Below the pieces are notes generated by a model. It was not told the origin of the DNA and did no database searches. It saw only the letters and a list, made by a program, of their open reading frames with translations. The translations under genes were made by a program, and so were the position numbers. Of a DNA stretch of 64,000 nucleotides, positions 1-7,127 are shown one piece after another (within the stretch, counting starts at the first letter, position 1; the number at the start of each line of letters is the position of its first letter). The stretch is from contig JALMLS010000310.1 of NCBI GenBank assembly GCA_038496445.1, positions 339,023 through 403,022 of the forward strand, in the 5' to 3' direction. The stretch is from Trichosphaerium sp. ATCC 40318 (lineage: Eukaryota; Protista; Tubulinea).

Positions 1-1358
1 CACATTTTTTTTTCAAGTTTTGTTTGTGGAATTACTCTTTTTTTTTTTTGTGGTAAATTTTGTTTTGTTTTCATACCTTATAAACAACGTCAAATGTTGG
101 TAAACCAAAAGCAAACTGAACAACAGTTACTTTTTCTTCTATACAAACATCCAAATGCTCATGATAATGAGGGAACATTGGTGTATCATAATCGCGCTTC
201 ATCCTCTTATTAGGTCTTTCAGCAAGCGTCGCTATAAGAAAGAAACACATAAGTACACAATAATGGCAACTAAATAAAACTAGAAGCTCGTTCACGAGCT
301 TAAAAAAAATGTGATAACCGACAGCAAACAACAAAATTTACGTAAAAACCGGTAAAGCGTAAAAAAAGGGAGCGCGAACCGGAGCGTTCTTGAGGGTTGT
401 AATACGTACGTTGTGCATCCATGTAACGAACAACACCTTTACCGTTATTATCCCTACAAGCTCTTTTTGTAGGTGCATGAGCATGACGAACATCAAAGTC
501 ATTATCATTGCCATTTGCAAGGTCAATTTTACCAAGCAATTGCTTTATATTAAAAATCTTTTCGTCCATTCCAACCATATCTCTTGCGTCTCTTTCATAT
601 GGTACAAGCAAATTTACACCGAATGGCTAAAACGGAGTTTAAGAACTACAGAAAAGTGCATAAGGAGAAATTGATTTTTTTTGTTGTAATTTTTTTCCGA
701 TAAAAAGGCAAAATTCTCATCTCCATACGGTGGAATTTGAATAAAAACCACTCTCATACGTTTAAAACATAGGTTTTTGTTTGTATGATGGGTTATAGTA
801 TAATACACAGACTTGGAATTGAGAATCGGATAAACACACCCAGAAAGAAAACTATACGCTAAAACCAAGTCGTACCTTCTTTGTTAACGCTTTAATTTGT
901 CTTATATTTGATCGGAGCTCGTCAGGCGACAAAATGCCTGCTCCAAATATTCCTAATCCGCCAGCGTTTGAAACAGCGGCAACGAGCTGTGGTGTGCCCA
1001 TTAGTTCATTCTACATGGTGTTAACTTTACACTCTTCGTTTTCGTTTAATCGCAGAAAAAGGGCGTTTACAATTCTACCCACCGGCAACGCAACGCAGAG
1101 TGCGTTGACAATTGCAATCAAACGTCAATTGAACGCAGATTGTTGTGGAATACAACAACAAGTTGTTCGTAAGTTCGAGAGAGCAAATTTTACGCAATGA
1201 GTTTGTTATACCGTATTATACGGTGTTTGACGTACTGTTATTGCCTGATTCATTGGTGCTAGTATTATTGGGTATTCAACGCCCAGTAGCTCTGAAACAC
1301 GCGTCTTAGGCCATGTGCGAAGCCCGCGAGGCACATTAGCTTGTGTTGAGGTGGTCAT
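1..1358 (-). CDS. Nitronate monooxygenase / FabK-like FMN-dependent oxidoreductase, spliced, 3' end runs off the left edge
   Basis: Hand-spliced exons from ATG 1358: MTTSTQ..ELLGVEYPIILAPM | NELMGTPQLVAAVSNAGGLGIFGAGILSPDELRSNIRQIKALTKK | PFGVNLLVP.. | ..EHLDVCIEEKVTVVQFAFGLP. These are the NMO family motifs; introns are GT..AG. Confidence 0.9.
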
Positions 1359-2109
1359 TAACAAAAATATGAGCTAATGCGTTGTTATCCTACTTAGCAT
1401 CGTATAATGCAACGCGAACTGCAATCATTTAATACGCAGTCGTAACTTAAAAAAACCGCGCTTAACGTACAAACCCGGCTGCAAGCCCCTTAAACTACGC
1501 GCTTGACGCTACTACCTTCACGAACGAGCAGTGTACGGAGTACAGTTTACGCTCGTAACCGCGTAACGGATGTCGGAAGAATTTCTGTACTAGACTCTCA
1601 ATACGCTTTAAACACGCTCCTTTACATGACATATCGTATTTTCTATGCTAGATATTACGGTGTATGCTCATTCTTACACTTCTCAACTTTTTTTATGTAA
1701 AATTGGTAAGTTTTTCCGAAAATTTACAACGGCTTTTGAACTTAGAACGGTTTTTTGTCAAGTTGTACAACCACTTGCTGGTACACATTGAAGGAGTTTC
1801 AATTAAATCAAAAAAATGCACACAAAAACGGGGAAATTAAAAAACTTTGCCCAAATCAGCTTACCATACTATCTATAATACCGCTGTAGCTAGTTGCTCG
1901 CGTGTACGGATTTTTTCTGCAACAATGCTGCGTTTAGTCAGGGTGAGGCGTATTTGCGTTCACAACGCTGGTGCCGTTTGGGAAACAGTATATATTGCTT
2001 GCTGGCGAAAAGTTTTTGAGTTTGGTCTAAGCGAGCAAGGAGGCTGACTTAGGACTGTTTGAGGTTTTTTTCAGTTTACACCTAAACTCTTTTGTTTTTG
2101 CTTGTAATA

Positions 2110-4517
2110 ATGTGGCAGTGGAGTGACGATGCTGGTGGGTGGAGGGATTATGATAAAGAGAGAAACAAAATTATTGAAACGGCGTTTCAAGCGAAACAGC
2201 CTTCAGCAGCTTTAACAATCAATGGAAACGCGTATAACGTTGTTTTTCAAAAAAAGGTGCTTATGAGAGTCCTCTGGGAGGAGTTCCTATCAAACCACTT
2301 TAAAATCATGTAATTACGCCTATTTAGATACGTCAAGTCCGTGTTGATGATAGTTTTTACTACAGAGACGTTCGTCGGTTAGTAGAGCAGGTAGGAACTA
2401 GAGGAAACAAAAAATAAACGTGATTTAAATAATTAAAGGCTGTAGGGTGAGAAGACTGTTGTGTGGGTAGACGACAACCCTCACAACAATGAAGGCCTTG
2501 TAAATGAAATTACAGCATCAGGTACTTAAAAAATTATGTTTCGCACGTGACTAACAAATTGTCCAGGTATTAAAGTAGTTCAGTTAAAATCAACTTGTGA
2601 AGCAATAAAGTACTTTCAACGCGATGATCTCAACACAGAAAATATGCGTGTTGTAAGTGATATGGCACGTGATGAGTTTAGTCCATCTTCAGACCGTAAA
2701 GAGATGATTACCACTGCTGGTGTTTTGCTTGCAAGACGTTTAGCTGTAGAACTTGACGTTGACGTATGCACTTTGTATTTTTTTTACTCTTCGATTTACT
2801 CAGTTTTGAAAGATACCTTACTTGATTTTTACTGGTGACTACTGGCAAGATATTATTAAAGAAAGATGGCCATTCATTAGATCATGCACTACAACACAAG
2901 AATGTAGGGATTTCATTACCTTCAAAGACTTGAGCCTTAGCGGTTTAGTAACGAACTTTGAAATGTGTATGTGCTTTAAAAAAAACAATAAGAGAAGCAC
3001 AACTAACACGATTTTAGACAGAGATCCAACCAGGAATGATAAAGAAGATTATCCATCATATTGGACACCATTCAGAGTAATTAAAACCGAAAACTAGCAC
3101 TCCACTTTGAACTAAAAGACTTTTTTAGGAACATGCTGATGTAGTAATCGACAACGCAACTGAAGAGTTTAAGTGTATAGATAGATTAATGAATGGAACT
3201 TTGAAGAAAAATCACGCGTATGGTGCGTACAGACGTGTGCCAAATGACTTACACCTCTACTTTTTTTGTTGATATTAACACGTGCAACCAAAACAGGCAA
3301 GTTAAACAACACGTTTCCATCAAAATATAAAGTGACACGTGTTGTTCGTCTGCAAGATGTAATGCAATGGAAGTTATATAATGTTCAGAGAGAGAAAATG
3401 CAAAGACAGCATAAAAAATACAGAGATACTCCAGGTACACCAACAAACATATCACCATCTGTTTAACAATTTCAAAAAAGGTTACAAAGAGACTTGCAAA
3501 CTACTTCGAGATAATCCTATCGAGACATCAAAATATAGCCAACAAGATATGAATAAAGATATAAGAGAAGTATACTTATTCCACGGAACAAATATATCAA
3601 CTACAATGAAGATAAAGGACCTTGGTTTTGATAACCGCGTTGGCAAAGTATCAGGTAAAATCAACTTTTTGATGTTTTTTGGATTTCTTGGTTCGAACGC
3701 TTAGATCCAATGCTCTTTAACGCACCAGCAATATTTTAAAAACCTATATACAAGATTAAAGCATCCGCACTGTATTTCCTAAGCGTCTTTACAATAAACC
3801 ACGTGACTAATGTTATTTATTAAAGGTATGTTCGGCGGAGGCGCATACTTTGCAGACGTTTCTAGTAAGGTAAGTCTAGCATTATATTAAATGATCACAA
3901 GTCAAATTAAACTAAATATACCCAACAGTCAGCACAGTATATACCTTGTTCTACTTGTGAAGGAGGCAACTACTTTAATAAAAAAAGGTGCACTTGCACG
4001 TGCAAAGAGGATCAAAAGGTACACAAGAAAAGAAAATACTAACCACAGCTACATTCAAAGAGAGCGTGGGCTATTACGAATACTAAATGAGGTGCTAGGA
4101 TTTGTGTATGATTGTTTCAAGGGTTTTACTTGGAGACTTTCATCTCGTTAAGAAGTACGATGAAAAGACATATAAAGGAACTACAAAGCATCCTGTGCGT
4201 ATATTGACGTGCTTTTTAGCATCTATAAATAAAGATGACGTTCATTAACGGAAAAAAAAACTAAAGCAAGCGTTAGGTTCGTCGTCCTCCTAACAAAGAG
4301 GGTTTAAATGGTATCACGTATGACTCTGTAGTCGCTGAGAGAAAGGAATGGGACGGATGTGTTGAATGGAGGGAGTTCGTGATTTACGACAGGTGCGTCG
4401 AATTGACGTGCTTTTTTTTTTGTTTTAGCGTAATTTATAGCGTCAACGCACTCACCGAAATGCTGTAGGAACCAGGCTTACGCCGAATACCTCGTTTATT
4501 ACAAACGAGTTTTGTAG
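2110..4517 (+). CDS. ADP-ribosyltransferase (PARP, tankyrase-like catalytic domain) with N-terminal WWE and receiver (REC)-like domains
   Basis: WWE: WQWSDDAGGWRDYD..IETAF. REC-like: VVWVDDNP..VVSDMAR..IPYLIFTG. PARP: YLFHGT, GMFGGGAYFADVSSKSAQY, WREFVIYDRNQAYAEYLVYY*. Many short introns. Confidence 0.88.
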
Positions 4518-5014
4518 CGTTTCAAATACGTCTTGAATGTTTTCTTAAAGTAGTACTAGATTCAAGGATAACAAATATACCATTGTTTAAACGATAAAAC
4601 GTAAAGTAACGTAAATTTTGAACCTTCTTTTTTTTTTTTCTTTATTACGGTAAACTACTTTTGTCTTCATGGAAACTACCAAACGACACATTCCTAAACT
4701 CCTAATGCCCCTAAATAATCAATTAAACATTACTACTAACAAAAAGGAGGTTGCTCAAATGAGGTTTTTCGGGTGAAATGCGAATTCGACATGCAAACCT
4801 AAATTTAGAAACCAGGTCAAAACCACTTACAGAAATTAGATATCACAAGACCTTAGTACCAATTTTAGCCTTGTACACACCCTCACTCATAATATTATAC
4901 CAAAAAAGCCTGTTTTGATCATAAAACAAGTTCACAAACTCACCAACCGTCGCAACAGGCTAGAATCATTTTATTTATTGTATTAACGCGTGGATACAAA
5001 CGTACTGCTTTAAA

Positions 5015-7127
5015 ATGTATCACAAGAAGATATTCAGTGGCGGTGGACGCGTTGGGCGTATAAAACACACGTCAGTAGACGCCGAATACCACAGTGCAGA
5101 CAAAATATATGCTATCAAAAGAAAGGCGAAAAGAAAGACTGTATCGGCACAAAGAAGAAAACTACCTTCATATATACTCACAGTAATAGTACAGCAAGGC
5201 GTTAACCTAATGGCAAAGGACTCAAACGGTACGGTCGGAGTGTAGTAACAATATTTCTCCATGATTTTCTTGTATTGCGTTTTTCGGGGTTTTTTGCAAC
5301 CTTTACTGATTTTAAAATAGGGCTGAGTGATCCTTTTGTTAAGCTATCAGTTGGTGCTATTAAATACAAGACAGCGATTATCAAAAAATCATTAAATCCA
5401 GTTTGGAAAACTGCTTTTTTTACATTGTGCGTACAAAATACAGACTTGCATCTTTTCCGCTACCGCTTTTTGACGCTTATAAATTACTAATTCATTCTCT
5501 TTTAGCGAACTTGAAAAGTTAGTAGGATCTCTATGCTTTACTGTTTATGATTTTGATAACTTTTCTCGAAACGACTTTATGGTACGTTTTTTTTTGTTGT
5601 TGTGCAATTACAATCACACGTGCTCTAATTGTTGGAGCTTTTCAAATTTATTTGTCTCCTAATATTAATAAAAAGGGAGAATATATAATCCCTTTGGAGA
5701 AAGTGAGACAATACCAAGGTGTACGTTATCTACACCTTCTTTCAAGATCAGGACAAAAAAATCAAGGATATGGTCAGCTTAAGGTAAAAATCAAGCTTGA
5801 TGGTTCTGCAGATCCGGAACCTATCCCAGAGATGACCCCTAAAAGACCAACACGTAAACTGCAGCTTTTACCAAAAGCACACATAGATGCAAAGAAGAAA
5901 AAGAAAAAAAGAAGAACCAGACCAAAAAAGAAGAAAAGTACTCCACGTGAAATGTTCAAAGCACAAACCGCAGTGAACATGACTGTACGATCTTCGCTAG
6001 AGTTCAAAGGTACTATATATACTACATTTTAAGTACCATGAGGCTTATGCTGGGGGTCTTAGTACTGTTTGTCGGAGACTACGCTGTTGGGAAGTCAACT
6101 TTGTGTCAAGTTTTAAACAACGAGATAAATGCAGCTGAGCTACCAACGGCAAAGCCGACTGTTGGTCAGGATTTTTATGTTAAAAAGTACGTGGGCAATC
6201 CTATAAATAGAAGTAACACTCTAAGACCGTTACCTAGGTATTTCGTTTACAATAAGTTTATAACCGTTCGTATCGTGGATACAGGTATACACTTTTTTTT
6301 TTCCTTTGTTTTCGTTTTGTAGTTACTAACCTACTTCTCCTAGCTGGTCAAGAGCGATTTAAGGCAATGTGCCAACAATTTTATAGAGGAGCACATGGCG
6401 CTGTAGTAATGTATGATATAACCCGCCTTGACTCTTTCGACAACGCCAGAAAGTACGGAAAAAACAATACAACGAGCTTTTTTTGTTGCGCTGCTTTAGG
6501 CTAACATTCCTTTCCAAAGTTGGATAACTGACGTGAGAGCTTATTCTGGAAATCCGTTGATACAAATTTTGCTAATTGGGAATAAGGTATGCAGTTTTAT
6601 TGAAAGAGTGACGCGAGACTTTTAACCTTTTTTTCTTCTTATTAAGTTATTAGAGTGATATGGCAAATAAACGTCAAGTTCCTTCTGAACGTGCAAAGAG
6701 ATTTGCACGTGAATGGCATATTAATTTTGTAGAAACAAGTAGTTTATCTCATGCTGCAGCAGAAATAACCTTTGATGTGGTACTGCAAGGTAGGTTTTTT
6801 AACTATTTATATCTTGTTTTCTAACTGTTTTTTTTCTGTTTAGATATTTGGTCTTTGTATAGTAAGATCGGTCTTCACGCCTTAAATCCTCAAGAAATGC
6901 ATATGGATAGGGCTGCATATGACGTATCAATGATGTCTTCGGAGGCTTTGGAGTTGTCTTTTTCAGACGATGAAGATAACTTGCCAGCGTTCCGTGGTCC
7001 TAGCCTACCTGAGGCTCCTCCTTCTCGGTTTTGGCATCCTAGACCAGAGACTACAAACGCACTTGTTGTAAAAAATACGCCTGAAAAAGAAGAGGAAGTT
7101 CAGTATGTCAAGTGCTGCGCAAACTAA
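5015..7127 (+). CDS. C2-domain / Rab-family small GTPase fusion protein with C-terminal CCxx prenylation motif
   Basis: C2: NLMAKDSNGLSDPFVK..SLNPVW..VYDFDNFSRNDFMG. Lys-rich linker. GTPase: GDYAVGKST, PTVGQDF, DTAGQERF, YRGAHG, LIGNKSD, ETSS. Ends KCCAN*. Confidence 0.88.

What the first reader, a model, noticed from the sequence alone, without database searches (positions are those of the whole stretch)
2110..4517. WWE-receiver-PARP: possible two-component control of ADP-ribosylation
Seen: between the WWE and PARP domains lies a REC-like domain with the acidic pair (WVDD), a putative phospho-acceptor Asp (VVSDMAR) and the beta-4 Thr (LIFTG), but no obvious conserved Lys. The catalytic domain keeps the H-Y-E triad (FHGT, AYFA, WREF) and a Cys-rich insert (CSTC..CTCTC) where tankyrases bind Zn. 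Established: WWE domains can bind poly(ADP-ribose); REC domains are His-Asp phosphorelay outputs. Inference: a phosphorelay- or allosterically-gated PARP with PAR feedback, an architecture I do not recognise among described PARPs.
Basis: partly seen in the sequence, partly recalled or inferred. Interest (0 to 1): 0.8.

Follow-up and report, generated by a model that had tools for sequence, protein, structure and literature searches.

The report
WWE, receiver-like, PARP enzyme in amoeba
A marine amoeba (Trichosphaerium) expresses one gene that joins an ADP-ribose-reader domain, a bacterial-style "receiver" switch domain and a tankyrase-like PARP enzyme; I found this combination nowhere else, it could link phosphorelay signalling to ADP-ribosylation, and whether the switch is really phosphorylated is untested.

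Summary
Window 2110-4517 (+) is one 14-exon gene for a 498-aa protein. It matches, exon by exon, a complete transcriptome ORF of Trichosphaerium sp. ATCC 40318 (P0001) except for K103T. Spliced contigs from three studies confirm 11 of its 13 GT..AG introns, and one contig runs from the 5'UTR through WWE and the middle domain into the PARP region.

- **Domains:** Pfam finds WWE (residues 1-66) and PARP (244-495, H344/Y375/E477). The best solved relatives of the catalytic domain are tankyrases. A Cys-rich insert lies in the tankyrase zinc loop.
- **Middle domain (about 71-204):** it misses the Pfam receiver cut-off (14.7 vs 30.2 bits). Four other lines point to a CheY-like receiver fold: profile comparison, the ESM Atlas model, a weak AF2 model, and a Foldseek-independent PDB search.
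- **Receiver residues:** D79/D80, D127 and T168 occupy the receiver's acidic pair, acceptor Asp and beta4 Thr positions. The beta5 Lys is probably missing.
- **Distribution:** no other protein with this domain was found apart from one 143-aa fragment.

Phosphorelay gating and PAR feedback remain inference; a phosphorylation-independent pseudo-receiver is about as likely. The scan noted this same stretch once before, and its unchecked notes report many other PARP fusions in this genome. Verdict: a new variant of a known kind, moderate interest.

The parts
2061..2109 (+). 5' leader of the mRNA
   Evidence: A SMART template-switch oligo appears as a loose end at 2061 in an X4 contig, and an X1 contig reaches 2006. 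An in-frame TAA lies at 2083-2085.
2110..2256 (+). Exon 1, residues 1-49: first part of the WWE domain
   Evidence: Pfam WWE E 6.8e-13 on this exon alone. The exon translation is exact in P0001.
2328..2390 (+). Exon 2, residues 50-70: end of the WWE domain (to residue 66) and a 7-residue linker
   Evidence: Pfam WWE covers 1-66 on P0001. Introns 2257-2327 and 2391-2445 are seen in spliced contigs of three studies.
2446..2521 (+). Exon 3, residues 71-96: receiver-like beta1 and alpha1, with the acidic pair D79/D80 (codons 2470-2475)
   Evidence: hhalign aligns VWVDD to CheY LVVDD (D12/D13). Pfam Response_reg matches residues 75-116 at E 0.036. AF2 DSSP gives beta1 at 74-78.
2567..2763 (+). Exon 4, residues 96-161: beta2, alpha2, beta3 with the putative acceptor D127 (codon 2659-2661), a 12-residue insertion, and alpha3
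   Evidence: hhalign aligns VVSD to CheY VISD (D57). Residues 125-132 are 8/8 identical in the 54%-identical fragment P0002. AF2 DSSP gives beta3 at 122-126.
2813..2941 (+). First part of exon 5, residues 162-204: beta4 with T168 (codon 2831-2833), alpha4, beta5 and alpha5. T187/T188 (2888-2893) sit at the expected Lys position; K199 (2924-2926) is the alternative.
   Evidence: hhalign aligns IPYLIFTG to CheY LPVLMVTA (T87). VIA aligns model 4..137 to receiver residues 2..120, so the domain ends near residue 204. The ESM Atlas model gives 124 aligned residues over 69-202.
2942..3052 (+). Short linker, residues 205-224, across intron 2967-3017
   Evidence: The intron is confirmed in X1 and X4 contigs. 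No family match in this stretch.
3053..4517 (+). PARP catalytic region, residues 225-498, in exons 6-14. H344 is at 3582-3584, Y375 at 3846-3848, E477 at 4373-4375; the stop is at 4515-4517.
   Evidence: Pfam PARP 244-495, E 7e-22. Tankyrase-1/2 are the best solved relatives at E 2e-8, with H, Y and E aligned. Five of the eight introns within this span (3077-3128, 3223-3296, 3655-3825, 4019-4098, 4195-4276) are listed with GT..AG ends in spliced contigs; 3870-3928 is listed with 'between: not known'. Introns 3435-3480 and 4393-4468 rest on P0001.
3947..4003 (+). Cys-rich insert: C389, C392, C403, C405, C407
   Evidence: It aligns with the tankyrase loop (GCPTHKDRSCYIC) where I recall the zinc site to be. 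A CxxC...CxC pattern is shared by the PARP relatives P0004 and P0005. Metal binding was not tested.

Best explanation
Shown: one expressed 14-exon gene of the amoeba Trichosphaerium encodes a compact 498-aa protein. It has an N-terminal WWE domain of the E3-ligase type (closest to TRIP12, DTX1 and HUWE1). After a 7-residue linker comes a very divergent CheY-like receiver-fold domain (about 71-204). After a further 20 residues or so comes a tankyrase-like PARP catalytic domain with an intact H-Y-E triad and a Cys-rich insert in the tankyrase zinc loop.

Inferred: the receiver-fold domain is the regulatory switch of the enzyme.
- Its acidic pocket (D79, D80, D127, with T168) is intact, and the segment around D127 is the most conserved part in the only relative found.
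- The leading mechanism is that Mg2+-dependent phosphorylation of D127 changes the alpha4-beta5-alpha5 face, which leads straight into the PARP domain. The phosphodonor would be an HPt protein fed by the histidine kinases common in Amoebozoa, or a small phosphodonor.
- That change would switch auto- or target ADP-ribosylation on or off.
- The WWE domain would hold the enzyme on existing ADP-ribose marks, giving feed-forward.
- The missing beta5 Lys implies a non-canonical switch even if phosphorylation occurs.
For: - **Gene and transcript:** the exon model equals P0001, a complete MMETSP0405 ORF from taxid 498012, apart from K103T. Spliced contigs of three studies show 11 of 13 introns, and one 820-nt contig spans 2006-3148.
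- **Domains:** WWE E 6e-13 and PARP E 7e-22. Tankyrases are the best PDB matches, with H344, Y375 and E477 aligned. The best WWE matches are TRIP12, DTX1 and HUWE1.
- **Receiver fold, sequence level:** Pfam's only hit at E <= 10 is Response_reg. hhalign against 13 E. coli receivers gives P 0.0013, with 1 of 300 shuffles reaching the score and controls negative; the alignment maps D79/D80, D127 and T168.
- **Receiver fold, structure level:** all 10 listed nearest clusters to the ESM Atlas model carry Response_reg, TM 0.60-0.70. The AF2 model's Foldseek hits are mostly receivers, and nearly all of the top 50 of 48,161 chains in the Foldseek-independent search are receiver domains, at Z 7.3-8.8.
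- **Constraint around D127:** residues 125-132 are 8/8 identical in P0002, against 55% identity overall.
- **Background:** histidine kinases are abundant in Amoebozoa, with 48 in Acanthamoeba and 51 in Physarum (PMC6324907).
Against: - The Pfam receiver score is far below the cut-off (14.7 vs 30.2 bits).
- In the register favoured by both predicted structures, the beta5 Lys is replaced by Thr.
- A 12-residue insertion follows the acceptor Asp.
- The AF2 model is weak (pLDDT 51, and under 50 in the C-terminal half), and I could not inspect the Atlas model residue by residue.
- No histidine kinase or HPt partner was identified. None lies in this window by a crude scan.
- Unchecked scan notes describe other receiver remnants in this genome as dead.
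- The domain was flagged through these very motifs, so their presence is partly ascertainment.
- No biochemical data exist.
Confidence: 0.42

Rival explanations
1. Pseudo-receiver. The middle domain has the receiver fold but is never phosphorylated. It serves as a fixed spacer, a dimerisation surface or a protein-docking module that positions the WWE and PARP domains. This would resemble the phosphorylation-independent atypical receivers of bacteria, the Rim15 receiver of yeasts, or the receiver-like wing domain of acid-induced arginine decarboxylase.
For: - The beta5 Lys is absent in the structure-supported register.
- The Pfam score is sub-threshold.
- A conserved 12-residue insertion lies beside the acceptor Asp.
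- Atypical receivers (HP1043-type 2hqr) and AdiA wing domains are among the structural matches.
- About 10% of bacterial receivers lack a conserved residue and count as atypical or pseudo-receivers (PMC8510515).
- Unchecked scan notes report dead receivers next to PARP-like domains in roughly 40 Roco genes of this genome.
Against: - All three acidic residues and the Thr are kept at only about 22% identity to CheY.
- The strongest conservation with P0002 is exactly around D127.
- From my own knowledge, not checked here: a Lys-to-Arg change at this position in CheY still allows phosphorylation.
Confidence: 0.4
2. Ligand- or metal-sensing receiver fold. The acidic pocket binds a divalent cation or a small nucleotide-like ligand rather than a phosphoryl group, and in that way tunes PARP activity.
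For: - An acidic pocket is present without the Lys that normally contacts the phosphoryl group.
- The insertion next to the pocket is conserved.
Against: - No precedent was retrieved in my searches.
- No ligand-binding motif was recognised.
- This reading is pure inference.
Confidence: 0.1
3. The middle segment is not a receiver relative at all. It would be another three-layer alpha/beta fold (TIR-like or Rossmann-like), or a recently shuffled exon block without a function of its own.
For: - The top hit of the wide search is a human 'uncharacterized Rossmann fold protein', 28tm_A, at Z 8.8, tied with the receivers.
- Two of the Atlas hit clusters also carry TIR domains.
- Both 3D models are predictions only, and my AF2 model has mean pLDDT 51.
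Against: - Nearly all of the top 50 hits in the wide search are receivers, and rank 50 still scores Z 7.3.
- The sequence profile match maps the receiver's own catalytic residues.
- The domain is conserved in a second sequence with the same exon end.
- The reading frame is intact and expressed in three studies.
Confidence: 0.06

Closest known systems
Tankyrase-1/2 (PARP5a/b) catalytic domain
   Same: Best solved relatives (E 2e-8). The H-Y-E triad and the YFA...SSKS..Y NAD pocket are shared, there is no helical regulatory domain, and a Cys-rich insert sits in the loop where I recall the tankyrase zinc site to be.
   Different: There are no ankyrin repeat clusters and no SAM domain. The insert has a CxxC...CxC(xC) pattern instead of the tankyrase Cys/His pattern seen in the aligned loop. 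The N-terminal half is WWE plus a receiver-like domain.
Animal WWE-PARPs (PARP7/TiPARP, PARP11, PARP12, PARP13, PARP14; clade 3E of Citarelli et al. 2010, PMC2964712)
   Same: A WWE domain lies N-terminal to a PARP catalytic domain. PARP12 and PARP15 are the next-best solved matches after the tankyrases.
   Different: Those proteins have replaced the catalytic Glu, mostly with Ile (PMC2964712), and the WWE directly precedes the catalytic domain. Here the Glu is kept and a receiver-fold domain is inserted between the two.
Enzymatic response regulators (for example Dictyostelium RegA, receiver-phosphodiesterase; bacterial CheB, PorX, RssB)
   Same: A receiver-fold domain is placed directly N-terminal to an enzyme domain. 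PorX and RssB receivers are among the top structural matches.
   Different: An ADP-ribosyltransferase output did not turn up in my paper searches. The receiver here is sub-threshold for Pfam and probably lacks the Lys. That RegA has this architecture is from my own knowledge, not checked here.
Atypical or pseudo-receivers (fungal Rim15 receiver, HP1043-type orphan regulators, AdiA wing domain)
   Same: A receiver fold with an incomplete set of the five conserved residues, attached to a non-two-component protein (PMC8510515; 2hqr and 5xx1 among the matches).
   Different: In Ascomycota Rim15 the acceptor Asp itself is replaced by Glu, Ala or Gly (PMC8510515). Here the three Asp residues and the Thr are kept and only the Lys is missing.
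RNF146, TRIP12 and HUWE1 WWE domains (ADP-ribose/PAR readers in E3 ligases)
   Same: These are the closest solved WWE domains (TRIP12 E 5e-7, DTX1 3.5e-5, HUWE1 1.7e-3, RNF146 0.47). The Trp/Tyr/Gln positions W2, W11, Y14, Y42 and Q52 are aligned with TRIP12.
   Different: Here the WWE is attached to a writer (a PARP) rather than a ubiquitin ligase. Ligand binding was not tested, and I did not compare residue by residue with RNF146.

Membership tests
PARP / ARTD catalytic domain (PF00644) | Profile match above the curated cut-off | tested here: met
   78.3 bits against a cut-off of 26.7, residues 244-495.
PARP / ARTD catalytic domain (PF00644) | H-Y-E catalytic triad and the NAD-pocket Ser/Tyr motif | tested here: met
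   H344, Y375 and E477 align with the tankyrase-1 His, Tyr and Glu. The SSKS..Y motif is conserved and invariant in relatives P0004-P0006.
PARP / ARTD catalytic domain (PF00644) | ADP-ribosyl transfer activity (poly versus mono) | not testable with these tools
   Needs an enzyme assay.
Tankyrase subfamily | Ankyrin repeat clusters and a SAM domain N-terminal to the catalytic domain | tested here: not met
   Pfam finds only WWE and PARP on the whole protein.
Tankyrase subfamily | Zinc-binding motif in the catalytic domain | tested here: inconclusive
   The insert occupies the same loop but has a different Cys pattern. No metal data are available.
WWE domain (PF02825) | Profile match above the curated cut-off | tested here: met
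   49.4 bits against a cut-off of 21.1, residues 1-66.
WWE domain (PF02825) | iso-ADP-ribose/PAR-binding residues | tested here: inconclusive
   The alignment to TRIP12 and HUWE1 keeps the aromatic and Gln positions. There was no residue-level comparison with RNF146 and no binding test.
Two-component receiver (REC, CheY-like; PF00072) | Profile match above the curated cut-off | tested here: not met
   14.7 bits against a cut-off of 30.2, covering profile positions 1-42 only.
Two-component receiver (REC, CheY-like; PF00072) | (beta-alpha)5 CheY-like fold | tested here: met
   On predicted models only. ESM Atlas model: TM 0.60-0.70 to 10 Response_reg clusters. AF2 model (pLDDT 51): Z 8-9, 110-120 residues aligned at about 3 A, with receivers dominating a search of 48,161 chains.
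Two-component receiver (REC, CheY-like; PF00072) | Acidic pair after beta1, acceptor Asp after beta3, Thr/Ser after beta4 | tested here: met
   D79/D80, D127 and T168 align with CheY D12/D13, D57 and T87. In the AF2 model beta1 and beta3 end just before the Asp residues.
Two-component receiver (REC, CheY-like; PF00072) | Lys after beta5 | tested here: not met
   The domain boundaries from both models put T187/T188 at this position. K199 fits only in a zero-confidence global alignment that needs a 9-residue insertion. Both registers rest on predictions, so this verdict is provisional.
Two-component receiver (REC, CheY-like; PF00072) | Phosphotransfer from a histidine kinase or HPt partner | not testable with these tools
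   Only this 64-kb window was readable and it holds no canonical kinase or receiver exon. The proteome could not be scanned.

The most novel reading that the evidence does not exclude
A His-Asp phosphorelay directly gates a poly(ADP-ribose) polymerase. Phosphorylation of D127 in the receiver domain would switch a tankyrase-like H-Y-E PARP on or off, while the WWE domain reads the product. This would make ADP-ribosylation a new output class of two-component signalling, in a eukaryote.
Probability: 0.3. Interest if true: 0.8.

Novelty: new variant of a known kind. Interest (0 to 1): 0.5.

Why it matters
Receiver domains control many kinds of output enzyme, but my paper searches turned up no ADP-ribosyltransferase output. 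PARPs, in turn, are not known to be regulated by Asp phosphorylation. If the receiver-like domain is active, this small soluble protein (498 aa, three tightly linked domains) would be a convenient natural system for studying allosteric control of a tankyrase-like PARP, and it would link two major signalling chemistries.

If the domain is a pseudo-receiver, the gene is another example of domain shuffling among PARP genes. According to unchecked scan notes this amoeba has expanded that family greatly. In that case the gene is mainly of interest for PARP evolution.

Tried and rejected
- **AF2, whole protein, single sequence:** unusable, pLDDT 32.
- **ESM Atlas feature search with exon 4 alone:** only phosphoribosyltransferase-like fragments at 0.90-0.91; treated as noise.
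- **phmmer of the middle domain against PDB sequences:** one chance hit, an isoamylase.
- **Word-index protein searches for the middle domain:** as a region of the whole protein it found only itself; stand-alone it found nothing.
- **phmmer of exon 4 against 1.84 billion representatives:** only P0001, the fragment P0002, and a spurious repeat protein.
- **P0002 look-up:** no contig on record, so its organism and neighbours are unknown.
- **Scans of JGI metagenome contigs and IMG/VR viral contigs:** no relatives, so no sign of giant-virus origin.
- **tblastn of all exons against the window:** no paralogue in the window.
- **Crude HMMs of E. coli receivers and kinase cores against the six-frame window:** nothing below E 1. 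Exon 3 scored only E 2.7, which shows how divergent the domain is.
- **N-termini of the PARP relatives P0004-P0006:** not receiver-like.
- **K199 as the conserved Lys:** considered, but not favoured, because it conflicts with the domain boundaries in both models.
- **Joined exon model:** I did not build or submit a joined translation of the window's exons. The database protein P0001 served instead.
Full report
**Gene and transcript**

The window is eukaryotic: 36-37% G+C, with short ORFs broken by short introns. Reading 1950-4750 and locating the boundaries gave a 14-exon model on the + strand:
- 2110-2256, 2328-2390, 2446-2521, 2567-2763, 2813-2966, 3018-3076, 3129-3222
- 3297-3434, 3481-3654, 3826-3869, 3929-4018, 4099-4194, 4277-4392, 4469-4517

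The model encodes 498 codons, and all 13 introns are GT..AG, 45-171 bp long.

A phmmer search of exon 4 against 1.84 billion representative proteins returned P0001, a 498-aa protein. Its sequence contains every whole-codon exon translation of the window exactly and in order, apart from K103T. The other six residues are codons split by introns.

P0001 is a 'complete' ORF on a 2200-nt transcript of MMETSP0405, taxid 498012. That taxid is Trichosphaerium sp. ATCC 40318, Amoebozoa. The published Trichosphaerium draft genome has 37.7% G+C and a mean intron of 75 bp. This fits the window, and the paper does not mention PARPs or two-component genes (PMC10521059).

Contigs of public runs from three studies, laid on 1900-4800, skip 11 of the 13 introns exactly where modelled:
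- One 820-nt contig runs 2006-3148, from the leader through WWE and the whole middle domain into the PARP region.
- Others bridge 2822-3381 and 3567-4372.
- A template-switch oligo marks a cDNA 5' end at 2061.

An in-frame TAA at 2083-2085 precedes the ATG. I did not build a joined translation of the window's exons; P0001 was used by reference instead.

**Flanking domains**

On P0001, Pfam finds WWE (1-66, 49.4 bits) and PARP (244-495, 78.3 bits) and nothing else above threshold.

Against solved structures, the catalytic domain is closest to tankyrase-1/2 (E 2e-8). PARP12, PARP15, PARP2 and PARP1 follow. In that alignment:
- H344, Y375 and E477 match the tankyrase His, Tyr and Glu.
- The YFA...SSKS..Y pocket motif is conserved.
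- Residues 389-412, with Cys at 389, 392, 403, 405 and 407, align with the tankyrase loop (GCPTHKDRSCYIC) where I recall the zinc site to be.

The only database relatives of the whole protein are four PARP-domain proteins. Two of them, P0004 and P0005 at 36-38% identity, share a CxxC...CxC pattern in the same insert but have unrelated N-termini. A structural metal site is plausible but unproven.

The WWE domain is closest to those of TRIP12, DTX1, HUWE1 and RNF146. From my own knowledge, these are ADP-ribose/PAR readers.

**The middle domain**

Sequence searches are almost blind to it:
- Pfam's only hit at E <= 10 is Response_reg, at 14.7 bits against a cut-off of 30.2. It covers profile positions 1-42 only.
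- PDB sequences give nothing.
- Word-index searches find only the protein itself.
- The exon-4 search found one real relative, P0002, a 143-aa ENA fragment at 54% identity. Its homology ends at the same exon boundary.

As a profile test I fetched 13 E. coli K-12 response regulators by reference, aligned their receiver domains, and ran hhalign:
- The middle domain scores 24.9 (P 0.0013) over 83 columns, residues 72-170 against CheY 5-89.
- Only 1 of 300 shuffles reaches that score (mean 12.0, sd 2.5), and the reversed sequence scores 12.7.
- The WWE and PARP parts and the N-termini of P0004-P0006 give P >= 0.1.
- The alignment puts D79/D80 on CheY D12/D13, D127 on D57 and T168 on T87.

Structure predictions agree:
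- The ESM Atlas holds this exact protein (pTM 0.56, pLDDT 0.75). A search with residues 68-225 of its model lists ten nearest clusters, all carrying Response_reg. TM by query is 0.60-0.70, with 115-130 residues aligned, mostly over 69-205.
- My AF2 run on the domain with P0002 is weak: pLDDT 51 and pTM 0.50, with only the beta1-alpha1-beta2-alpha2-beta3 half above 60.
- Even so, Foldseek's top PDB hits for that model are almost all receiver domains, at E 1e-3 to 2e-2.
- VIA gives Z 8-9.1 with 110-120 residues aligned at about 3 A, model 4..137 against receiver 2..120.
- The Foldseek-independent search of 48,161 chains gives receivers for nearly all of the top 50, at Z 7.3-8.8. A human 'uncharacterized Rossmann fold protein' and decarboxylase wing domains are the exceptions.

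I conclude that residues 71-204 adopt a CheY-like receiver fold. This rests on predictions, not on a solved structure.

**Which catalytic residues are kept**

Four of the five canonical residues are in place. The fifth, the Lys after beta5, is doubtful.
- Both models end the domain near residue 204, and the Atlas match aligns 124 residues within 69-202. That leaves room only for the 12-residue insertion after D127.
- This fixes beta5 at 181-186 and puts T187/T188 where the Lys should be.
- A global hhalign alignment instead matches DFIT-F-K199 to CheY's GYVV-K109, but it needs a 9-residue insertion and has zero confidence.

The insertion after D127, and D127's own neighbourhood, are the best conserved part in P0002: residues 125-132 are 8/8 identical, against 55% overall. 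That argues for constraint on this surface.

**Mechanism**

The linkers are short, 7 and about 20 residues. The alpha4-beta5-alpha5 face of the receiver fold, which is the usual output face, therefore leads almost directly into the PARP domain, and allosteric coupling is plausible.

Histidine kinases are abundant in Amoebozoa: 48 in Acanthamoeba, 51 in Physarum, 14 in Dictyostelium (PMC6324907). Receivers lacking one of the five residues are classed as atypical or pseudo-receivers, about 10% in bacteria (PMC8510515).

I rate the readings as follows:
- Phospho-gated PARP: about 0.4.
- Phosphorylation-independent pseudo-receiver: about 0.4.
- Other ligand or metal sensing: about 0.1.
- Not a receiver relative: about 0.06.

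Nothing here tests PARP activity, PAR binding or zinc binding.

**Context and novelty**

I found no paper describing a receiver domain in a PARP or as a partner of an ADP-ribosyltransferase output. No relatives turned up in JGI metagenome contigs or IMG/VR viral contigs, and there is no paralogue in the window.

Earlier notes of this scan, which are unchecked, report the following:
- The same stretch was flagged once before.
- A SPRY-RCC1-PARP gene lies about 4 kb upstream of the window.
- The genome holds about 100 ankyrin-PARP genes, about 40 Roco-PARP genes with a 'dead receiver', and pseudo-kinase/pseudo-receiver fusions.

This gene is therefore one product of very active PARP domain shuffling in this amoeba. 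That lowers the surprise of a single new architecture.

**Verdict**

This is a new variant of a known kind, of moderate interest.

Noticed in passing
window 5275-6322 (+): The gene immediately downstream appears to combine a C2 domain exon (Pfam C2, E 1.2e-8), a very Lys-rich exon, and a small-GTPase P-loop exon with weak Roc/Ras matches.
   Followed up: partly
window 2587-2589, 2709 and 2965: There are strain differences. The window has K103 where the MMETSP transcript has T. 2709 T>A appears in contigs of all three studies. Run X2 (organism B, more divergent) has A at 2965, which would change M212.
   Followed up: partly
P0004, P0005 (relatives, not in the window): These form a small group of protist PARPs sharing the CxxC...CxC insert and 36-38% identity in the catalytic domain, with unrelated N-termini. 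P0005 has a weak SPRY match, like the SPRY-RCC1-PARP gene that the scan noted 4 kb upstream of this window.
   Followed up: partly
PDB entry 28tm_A (structural match to the model of residues 71-203): A human 'uncharacterized Rossmann fold protein' of 113 residues tops the Foldseek-independent search (Z 8.8, 17% identity), tied with receiver domains. I do not know what it is.
   Followed up: no
window 3655-3825: Intron 9 (171 bp) is more than twice the length of any other intron of the gene (45-82 bp). It is spliced out in an X2 contig.
   Followed up: no
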